From Antechinus flavipes (taxonomy: Eukaryota): a DNA stretch of 64,000 nucleotides. Below the pieces are notes generated by a model, which saw only the letters and a list, made by a program, of their open reading frames with translations, searched no databases and was not told the DNA's origin. The stretch lies in the NCBI RefSeq assembly GCF_016432865.1, contig NC_067401.1, positions 191,394,001 through 191,458,000 on the forward strand, in the 5' to 3' direction. Shown in pieces: positions 22,564 to 54,073 of the stretch (within the stretch, counting starts at the first letter, position 1; every line of letters starts with the position of its first letter). The position numbers and the translations under genes were made by a program.

Positions 22564-54073
<31,510 letters not shown>

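What the first reader, a model, noticed from the sequence alone, without database searches (positions are those of the whole stretch)
50328..50344. The gamma exon doubles as an 11-nt microexon giving a fully canonical route to the PDZ-binding tail
Seen: AG|CTCCTCATCAG|GTAATT. The gamma stop (AGG TAA) overlaps a good donor. Splicing these 11 nt to the ordinary alpha2 acceptor (53927) gives CTC CTC ATC AGG AGA GGC AGC..., that is [17 protein letters not shown]. Direct alpha1 needs a junction at 53928 preceded by GG rather than AG, so this microexon is the only all-GT-AG path I found to the PSD-95 ligand. It could act as a three-way switch between gamma, alpha2 and a PDZ-bearing form. It may match a minor isoform already reported; I cannot verify that.
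Basis: partly seen in the sequence, partly recalled or inferred. Interest (0 to 1): 0.75.

Follow-up and report, generated by a model that had tools for sequence, protein, structure and literature searches.

The report
SYNGAP1 gamma exon's embedded 11-base microexon
The first 11 bases of the SYNGAP1 gamma exon end in a deeply conserved splice-donor motif that overlaps the gamma stop codon; splicing there would give a PSD-95-binding SynGAP with four extra residues, a form that gene-prediction pipelines already list in several mammals and reptiles but that has not been shown in RNA or protein.

Summary
At 50328-50338 the gamma exon reads AG|CTCCTCATCAG|GTAATT. The gamma stop (TAA, 50340-42) lies inside the donor motif. 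Joining the 11 nt to the alpha2 acceptor (53927) gives [17 protein letters not shown].

Two findings support the idea. The same layout (branch site, AG, exactly 11 nt, CAG|GTA) is invariant in lynx, hamster, python, another sauropsid and an owl. The predicted protein tail also exists in RefSeq models of five carnivores (LLIR), a sea turtle (LFIR) and a rattlesnake (LFTR).

- This is not the only GT-AG route. Skipping exon 18, or a donor 14 nt downstream, reaches the same frame, and both appear in models.
- The main alpha1 comes from a direct junction shifted by one base, about 35% of junction reads in human cortex.
- The usual gamma exon is 80 nt with a second conserved donor at 50407|50408.
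- No paper describes the LLIR form, and the gene models may be prediction artefacts.

Verdict: a real, conserved alternative donor motif, probably used at a low level (about 55%). The regulated three-way switch remains speculation.

The parts
49375..49465 (+). SYNGAP1 exon 18 (late, non-beta acceptor), 91 nt. Its donor is CAG|GTGGAA at 49465|49466.
   Evidence: length 91, which is 1 mod 3. The donor is weak by the weight matrix (0.6 bits).
49466..49485 (+). First 20 nt of the intron after exon 18 (GTGGAAATTACAATGTCATT). It holds a second GT at 49480-81, the '+14' donor.
   Evidence: Identical in lynx, hamster, python, two unnamed sauropsid contigs, Manacus and owl. Read through as VEITMS... 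in many models. The +14 route gives VEITM-RGSF...QTRV.
50295..50299 (+). Likely branch-point sequence CTGAC for the gamma acceptor. The A at 50298 lies 29 nt before the exon.
   Evidence: TGAC is invariant in all six aligned sequences. Its role as branch point is inferred from the consensus.
50300..50327 (+). Polypyrimidine tract and acceptor AG (50326-27) of the gamma exon, with UGC directly before the AG.
   Evidence: 89% pyrimidine over positions -20 to -3. The AG is invariant.
50328..50338 (+). The 11 nt CTCCTCATCAG. These are the first 11 nt of the gamma exon, and would be the proposed microexon if the proximal donor is used.
   Evidence: The length is exactly 11 nt in window, lynx, hamster, python, sauropsid L005 and owl, and 6 of the 11 positions are invariant.
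50336..50344 (+). Proximal donor motif CAG|GTAATT, with cleavage after 50338.
   Evidence: CAG|GTA is invariant in six sequences. Positions +4 to +6 vary (AATT mammals, AACT squamates, AGCG owl). It has the best weight-matrix score in the region.
50340..50342 (+). Gamma stop codon TAA, lying inside the proximal donor at positions +2 to +4.
   Evidence: The owl has TAG at the same place.
50328..50407 (+). The usual (long) gamma cassette exon, 80 nt, ending at the distal donor CAG|GTTGGT (50407|50408).
   Evidence: The distal CAG|GT.GG is invariant in all six sequences. Bird RefSeq isoforms read through the whole homologous exon into the last exon (P0240). Ensembl marks mouse and human gamma transcripts as NMD targets, which fits a stop 65 nt before the last junction. 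No transcript from this species was seen.
50385..50393 (+). Third donor-like site GAG|GTGACT (exon would be 60 nt). Conserved in mammals only.
53927..54073 (+). Start of the last exon. It is coding in three frames: alpha2 from 53927 (stop TAG 54071-73), alpha1/PDZ frame from 53928 (stop TGA 53967-69), and a third frame from 53932 that stays open for 78 codons.
   Evidence: The acceptor TTGCAG|GAGAGGCAGC and the [13 protein letters not shown] frame are identical in python and owl.

Best explanation
50328-50338 is the 5' end of the SYNGAP1 gamma cassette exon. That exon has one acceptor and two deeply conserved donors. If the distal donor (50407|50408) is used, the mRNA keeps the TAA at 50340-42 and encodes SynGAP-gamma (LLIR*). 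If the proximal donor (50338|50339) is used, the stop codon is removed as part of the intron. Only 11 nt (2 mod 3) are then included, and the three-frame last exon is read in the PDZ-ligand frame, giving ...[23 protein letters not shown] think the proximal donor is really used, but as a minor route. The bulk of SynGAP-alpha1 comes from the direct exon 18 to last-exon junction shifted by one base. Shown here: the sequence, the frames, the conservation, and the existence of predicted isoforms. Inferred: that the donor is cleaved in vivo, in this species, and at what level.
For: The geometry and product are confirmed. The proximal donor is the best-scoring donor within the gamma exon and stronger than the exon 18 donor. 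Branch site, AG, exact 11-nt spacing and CAG|GTA are invariant in window, lynx, hamster, python, sauropsid L005 and owl, while the flanks carry indels. The gamma tail is always four residues of the form L-x-x-R: LLIR in mammals and alligators, LFIR in a turtle, LFTR and LIIR in squamates, LSVR in birds. The residues vary but the length and the terminal AGG-stop do not. The exact predicted tail is present in RefSeq models: P0380 (XP_029800217.1 Suricata suricatta X7, sharing its sequence with XP_045861635.1 and XP_047590215.1), P0383 (Lontra canadensis X6), P0384 (Prionailurus viverrinus X5), P0442 (Chelonia mydas X7, LFIR) and P0448 (Crotalus tigris X6, LFTR). The lineage-specific residues match the genomic 11-mers I read in python and L005. 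The NCBI pipeline also emits the non-canonical direct alpha1 (Mastomys X4) and the +V form, so it is not forced into canonical work-arounds. More broadly, the PDZ frame is reached by frame-shifting inserts in other vertebrates: a fish-like transcript has a 50-nt insert and Xenopus X8/X9 use an extended exon 18.
Against: No paper in the library holds the peptide or describes a SYNGAP1 microexon. The 2019 catalogue of mouse, rat and human isoforms lists no alpha1 form with four extra residues. Donor positions +4 to +6 are not conserved, and the owl site (GTAGCG) is weak. That pattern is what constraint on an Arg codon plus a stop codon would leave, rather than constraint on a donor. Ab initio style models also pick this donor in implausible contexts (goat P0195, camel P0327, puma P0386). 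A very poor donor (+14, -2.5 bits) appears in models too, so some models ending in QTRV may be algorithmic fixes. A scan of JGI metagenome contigs for the junction 21-mer found nothing, though that collection holds very few SYNGAP1 transcripts.
Confidence: 0.55

Rival explanations
1. The donor look is a by-product of coding. The gamma tail ends in Arg (AGG) followed by a stop, and any AG + T(A/G)(A/G) reads as AG|GTR. The site is never cleaved. The LLIR-RGSF database models are gene-prediction artefacts made when pipelines tried to connect alpha1-type protein evidence to exon 18.
For: Conservation stops exactly where the stop codon ends (positions +5 and +6 vary). The whole block is 92-94% identical between this window and two eutherians, so the donor is not singled out. 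Several different solutions ending in QTRV occur in models of different species: +14 VEITM, VEITI-GSF, exon 18 skipping, and odd camel, goat and puma models. The 2019 mouse, rat and human annotation and the searched literature are silent.
Against: The Arg codon is AGG in all six DNA sequences although AGA and CGN are synonymous. The tail length never changes, although the residues at positions 2 and 3 do. The same route appears independently in carnivore, turtle and snake annotations with the correct lineage-specific residues. The NCBI pipeline can output the non-canonical direct alpha1, so it had no need to invent a microexon (P0338).
Confidence: 0.33
2. The proximal GT is a U1-binding pseudo-donor. 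It helps define or tune inclusion of the 80-nt gamma exon, or competes with the weak distal donor, without itself being the cleavage site.
For: It is a strong U1 match (8 of 9) only 11 nt from the acceptor, a distance at which exon definition is sterically difficult. The distal donor is weak by the weight matrix (2.0 bits) yet invariant and used in bird models.
Against: Nothing here tests U1 binding. This reading does not explain the database isoforms. It is also compatible with occasional cleavage, so it is not exclusive of the best explanation.
Confidence: 0.1

Closest known systems
SynGAP-gamma cassette exon (exon 19 in Araki 2020, exon 20 in Kilinc 2022)
   Same: Same acceptor, the same first four codons LLIR, the same stop. 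Included in about 9% of non-beta transcripts in human cortex.
   Different: Gamma needs the mRNA to read through the GTAATT. The form discussed here cuts at it, so the stop is lost and only 11 of the 80 nt remain.
SynGAP-alpha1 (PDZ ligand QTRV)
   Same: Identical last 13 residues [13 protein letters not shown], read in the same frame of the last exon.
   Different: Alpha1 is LLDAQ-RGSF, made by a junction one base away from alpha2 that cannot be GT-AG on both sides. The microexon form carries LLIR between the coiled-coil end and the PDZ-binding tail, and all its splice sites are canonical.
Neuronal microexons (3-27 nt, SRRM4/nSR100 programme; from established knowledge)
   Same: Size of 11 nt, deep conservation, strong flanking splice sites, a UGC directly before the acceptor AG, and a neuronal synaptic gene.
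   Different: It is frame-shifting rather than a multiple of three. It shares its acceptor with a longer exon, so it is formally an alternative 5' splice site. Neural-specific inclusion and SRRM4 dependence are untested. None of the 29 papers naming both SYNGAP1 and microexons that I opened reports one.
Other frame-switch routes into the SYNGAP1 last exon
   Same: An upstream event of length not divisible by three selects which frame of the last exon is read. Examples: the beta acceptor (+13) into the third frame in birds, squamates and frogs; a 50-nt insert in a fish-like transcript; extended exon 18 in Xenopus X8/X9; exon 18 skipping in Rhineura X11.
   Different: Those events lie at other positions. 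Only this one embeds a stop codon inside the donor.

Membership tests
Alternative 5' splice site within a cassette exon | Two GT donors downstream of one shared acceptor | tested here: met
   The acceptor is at 50327|50328, with donors at 50338|50339 and 50407|50408. Both are invariant in six amniote sequences.
Alternative 5' splice site within a cassette exon | Both donors are observed in spliced RNA | tested here: inconclusive
   Distal donor: supported by bird RefSeq isoforms reading through the exon. Proximal donor: supported only by predicted proteins in seven species. No reads were seen.
Neuronal (SRRM4-type) microexon | Length 3-27 nt | tested here: met
   11 nt.
Neuronal (SRRM4-type) microexon | UGC-containing element close upstream of the acceptor AG | tested here: inconclusive
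   A single UGC at -5 to -3 (cccccUGCAG). YGCAG is common at ordinary acceptors, so this is a weak signal.
Neuronal (SRRM4-type) microexon | Neural-specific, SRRM4-dependent inclusion | not testable with these tools
   Needs tissue RNA-seq or a knock-down.
Neuronal (SRRM4-type) microexon | Usually preserves the reading frame | tested here: not met
   11 nt is 2 mod 3, so it switches the frame of the last exon.
PDZ-ligand SynGAP isoforms (alpha1 class) | C-terminus ...QTRV* (class I PDZ ligand) preceded by GSFPPWVQ | tested here: met
   The translation of 11 nt + 53927 ends in [13 protein letters not shown]. Binding to PSD-95 was not tested.
SynGAP-gamma | C-terminus LLDAQ-LLIR* | tested here: met
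   This holds for the read-through form. The same tail is found in transcript-derived proteins of other mammals (P0016, P0154).

The most novel reading that the evidence does not exclude
Donor choice inside the gamma exon is an ancient, amniote-wide, regulated binary switch. Cutting at the stop-embedded proximal donor would make an NMD-immune, PSD-95-anchored SynGAP (LLIR-alpha1) by fully canonical splicing. Cutting at the distal donor would make the unanchored, NMD-prone gamma form. Part of what is now measured as gamma (the tryptic peptide LLDAQLLIR) or as alpha1 (C-terminal antibodies) would then be this fifth isoform.
Probability: 0.15. Interest if true: 0.7.

Novelty: new member of a known kind. 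Interest (0 to 1): 0.45.

Why it matters
SYNGAP1 is a leading single-gene cause of intellectual disability and epilepsy, and its C-terminal isoforms have different, sometimes opposite, synaptic roles. Work on raising or re-balancing isoforms assumes four C-termini.

If the stop-embedded donor is used, three things follow.
- There is a second, canonical route to a PDZ-binding SynGAP that splice-switching oligonucleotides could favour or block.
- Gamma and this form share the tryptic peptide LLDAQLLIR, and this form shares the alpha1 epitope, so current isoform quantification would be slightly mis-assigned.
- A single synonymous change (AGG to AGA at the Arg codon) would separate the two functions experimentally.

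If the donor is not used, the finding is an ordinary coincidence of an Arg codon and a stop codon. In that case the database models deserve a warning.

Tried and rejected
- **Reads.** No reads were seen, and I did not call the tool again.
- **Literature.** No paper holds [25 protein letters not shown] or DAQLLIRR. Papers naming both SYNGAP1 and microexons do not report one. A search on long-read isoforms gave nothing relevant. Yang 2023 is not held.
- **Protein fragments from assembled RNA contigs.** They show alpha2, +V, beta, gamma and intron-retained forms. They show no alpha1 at all, although alpha1 is abundant, so their silence on the microexon form says nothing.
- **Junction 21-mer in JGI metagenome contigs.** No hit. 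This is uninformative, because few SYNGAP1 transcripts are held there.
- **RNA structure that might hide the proximal donor.** The fold is no better than shuffled sequence (z = -0.16). The only conserved 'helix' pairs the branch-site motif with the donor and never varies. Rejected.
- **Fish genomic loci.** The two loci fetched to confirm the 50-nt insert did not reach the relevant exons.
- **Alligator and turtle loci.** Not on record.
- **Recursive (two-step) splicing through the microexon as a source of true alpha1.** Considered and rejected on sequence. No step regenerates a site that would start the exon at 53928.

Full report
**What is in the window**

The window holds the 3' half of a mammalian SYNGAP1 gene on the + strand (ORFs). 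Exon 18 ends at 49465 (...LLDAQ) with the donor CAG|GTGGAA. At 50326-50344 the sequence reads AG|CTCCTCATCAG|GTAATT. The last exon starts at 53927 after TTGCAG.

- alpha2: junction at 53927, tail ERQL...TTDH*.
- alpha1: junction one base later at 53928, tail [13 protein letters not shown].
- gamma: read-through of the exon, tail LLIR*.
- 11 nt + 53927: tail [17 protein letters not shown].

The alpha1 junction indeed cannot be GT-AG on both sides. The literature agrees that alpha1 and alpha2 differ by a single base at this junction (McMahon 2012; Yokoi 2022). A 2026 review lists a GG acceptor in connection with Syngap1.

**How good is the donor, and is it more than chance?**

I used a simple donor weight matrix.
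- CAG|GTAATT scores 5.1 of 8.7 bits and matches the U1 consensus at 8 of 9 positions.
- The exon 18 donor scores 0.6.
- The two downstream donor-like sites in the gamma exon score 3.4 (GAG|GTGACT, 50387|88) and 2.0 (CAG|GTTGGT, 50407|08).
- Sites at least this good occur about once per 1,600 nt on this strand.

However, any stop codon preceded by AG reads AG|GTR. The motif in one species is therefore a modest coincidence, not a rare one.

**RNA evidence in this species**

The look-up of sequencing runs found 18 probable RNA runs that hold about a third of the words of 49300-55300. I saw no reads.

The later protein searches used database proteins, restricted by 'region' to residues coded by exons 16-17. 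One point to disclose: local pairwise blastn inside run_python compared window 47000-58000, which includes those places, with loci already fetched. Nothing was sent to a collection.

I did not fetch contigs for the unnamed eutherian transcript proteins (P0016, P0100-P0103) because some could be human. N runs in the lynx, hamster and python loci were left as they are.

**Comparative anatomy**

From proteins found with exon 17 I fetched genomic loci of Lynx pardinus (L002), Cricetulus griseus (L011), Python bivittatus (L004), an unnamed sauropsid (L005) and Bubo scandiacus (L007).

The gamma block is 92-94% identical between the window and the two eutherians over 131-141 nt. In the six-way alignment these features are invariant:
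- TGAC of a likely branch site (50296-99);
- the acceptor AG;
- six of the 11 exon bases, including the final CAG;
- GTA of the proximal donor;
- a second site, CAG|GT.GG, at 50405-50412.

The spacing from AG to GT is exactly 11 nt in all six sequences (CTCCTCATCAG, CTGTTCACCAG, CTGTTCATCAG, CTGTCCGTCAG), while the flanks carry indels. Donor positions +4 to +6 differ (AATT, AACT, AGCG). The distal site defines an 80-nt exon in this window.

Bird RefSeq isoforms read through the homologous exon, in the beta frame, into the last exon (P0240). Ensembl labels mouse and human gamma transcripts as NMD targets (Gou 2020, Table S1). That fits a stop 65 nt upstream of the last junction. I therefore take 50328-50407 as the usual gamma exon, and the 11 nt as its start.

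**Annotated isoforms**

A search with a full-length felid SynGAP, plus two cluster listings, gave 383 further proteins, nearly all named SynGAP isoforms (classified).

- ...[22 protein letters not shown] in P0380. This is XP_029800217.1, Suricata suricatta X7. The same sequence is filed as XP_045861635.1 and XP_047590215.1, which by their accession series belong to Meles meles and Lutra lutra.
- The same tail in P0383 (Lontra canadensis X6) and P0384 (Prionailurus viverrinus X5).
- ...LLDAQLFIRRGSF... in P0442 (Chelonia mydas X7).
- ...LLDAQLFTRRGSF... in P0448 (Crotalus tigris X6).

The reptile residues match the 11-mers I read in L005 and python.

Gamma-type tails are always four residues of the form L-x-x-R:
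- LLIR in mammals and alligators;
- LFIR in a turtle;
- LFTR and LIIR in squamates;
- LSVR in birds.

One Ensembl turtle model (LSWSFVPWRR, P0205) is an exception.

**Why the models do not settle the matter**

Other routes to QTRV also appear in models:
- [14 protein letters not shown] (Macaca mulatta X12, two ground squirrels, Protobothrops, and an Ensembl guinea-pig model). This uses AAT|GTCATT 14 nt into the intron, a very poor donor (-2.5 bits).
- VEITI-GSF (Chelonoidis).
- Exon 18 skipping, SIIGR-RGSF (Rhineura X11).
- Odd goat, camel and puma models that use the proximal gamma donor in implausible combinations.

This variety could reflect genuine low-level splicing around an unusual junction. 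It could equally reflect pipelines stitching alpha1-type protein evidence to exon 18. In favour of real evidence, the NCBI pipeline does output the non-canonical direct alpha1 (Mastomys coucha X4, P0338). It also makes the non-canonical +V form the main isoform in carnivores, so it is not forced to invent canonical detours. I cannot read the evidence lines of those records with the tools at hand.

In this window, exon 18 skipping (91 nt, 1 mod 3) and the +14 donor both reach the PDZ frame canonically.

**Literature**

Four C-termini are recognised, and NCBI's mouse 'alpha3' adds a fifth (Gou 2020). In human cortex, junction reads split about 56% alpha2, 35% alpha1 and 9% gamma (Araki 2020).

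No paper in the library contains the LLIRRGSF peptide or reports a SYNGAP1 microexon. Yokoi 2022 saw an extra gamma variant with a longer retained sequence, not a shorter one. If the 11-nt form exists in rodents or people, it is minor or has been overlooked. Ordinary aligners handle 11-nt exons badly. In fragment analysis a +11 product sits next to the beta products at +12 and +13.

**Mechanism I consider most likely (about 55%)**

This is a competition between two 5' splice sites in one cassette exon.
- The distal donor keeps the stop and gives gamma, a transcript that the 50-55-nt rule predicts to be NMD-sensitive.
- The proximal donor removes the stop, includes 11 nt, and shifts the last exon into the PDZ frame. 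Its stop then lies in the last exon, so the transcript would be NMD-immune.

The proximal site lies only 11 nt from the acceptor. Its use probably needs intron definition or the neuronal microexon machinery, which would keep it minor outside neurons. This last step is inference.

Rivals:
- About 33%: the motif is only an Arg-plus-stop by-product and the models are artefacts. The loss of conservation exactly after the stop codon favours this.
- About 10%, and not exclusive of the best explanation: the site is a U1-binding pseudo-donor that tunes gamma-exon inclusion.

**Comparison with known things and novelty**

The exon, its stop, and the alpha1/alpha2 frames are known. The LLIR-alpha1 product is already catalogued as computational predictions in at least seven amniote species, but I found it neither described nor validated in the literature searched. 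In this genome it would be one more instance of that predicted isoform. Two things may be new here: the amniote-wide invariance of the AG-11 nt-GTA layout, and the constant four-residue tail.

**Verdict**

Interest is moderate (0.45). The gene matters clinically and the test is cheap. Abundance is unknown and probably low, and the supporting models could be artefacts.

Noticed in passing
window 49463-49485 (exon 18 donor and first 20 intron bases): The intron start GTGGAAATTACAATGTCATT is identical in lynx, hamster, python, two unnamed sauropsid contigs, Manacus and owl, and is implied in frog by read-through proteins. Annotated and assembled isoforms show three junction positions here: -1 (alpha1), 0 (alpha2) and +3 (an extra Val, LLDAQ-V-ERQL). 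The +3 form is the main model in carnivores and is also found in RNA-contig proteins P0173, P0176 and P0178. The extra Val also occurs joined to the gamma exon in zebra finch (LLDAQ-V-LSVR, P0104), so the wobble is on the donor side (intron starts GG, GT or GA). This suggests that the non-canonical alpha1 intron is GG-AG rather than GT-GG.
   Followed up: partly
window 53927-54170: The last exon is open in all three frames. The third frame (from 53932) runs for 78 codons here. The homologous frame is used by beta-frame isoforms in birds, squamates and frogs (GEAAFRRGCS...) and probably corresponds to NCBI's mouse 'alpha3' (+67 aa).
   Followed up: partly
window 48212 joined to 53927: Skipping the 91-nt exon 18 gives ...[18 protein letters not shown]. 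This is a canonical route to the PDZ tail that lacks the end of the coiled coil. It is annotated in Rhineura floridana X11 (P0507).
   Followed up: partly
L001:519-568 (Logan SRR26159665 transcript contig, fish-like): A 50-nt segment (2 mod 3) sits between ...MLDAQ and the last exon and puts it in the PDZ-type frame (tail SSFPPWVLQTPV*). Without a genome I cannot tell whether it is a cassette exon or an upstream alternative acceptor.
   Followed up: partly
P0299, P0300 (Xenopus tropicalis X9, X8): The frog models reach [13 protein letters not shown] through the beta acceptor plus a long extension of exon 18 into the conserved intron (...GGNYNVIV...). This is yet another route to the same tail.
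   Followed up: no
window 50385-50393: A third donor-like site, GAG|GTGACT, lies 60 nt into the gamma exon. It is conserved in the three mammals but absent from sauropsids. A stop-to-junction distance of 45 nt would make such a gamma transcript NMD-insensitive.
   Followed up: no
window 49300-55300: RNA runs hold 0.29-0.35 of the sampled words, while the exons make up about 0.26 of the stretch. Many database proteins read through the exon 18 donor ([11 protein letters not shown]...). Together these suggest frequent retention of the intron after exon 18.
   Followed up: no
P0313, P0354 (Mustela erminea X8, Meles meles X7): A further C-terminus, LLDAQ-ASPPR(P/L)PRLLTP*, appears in mustelid models. 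It presumably comes from another cassette exon between exon 18 and the last exon. I did not look for it in this window.
   Followed up: no
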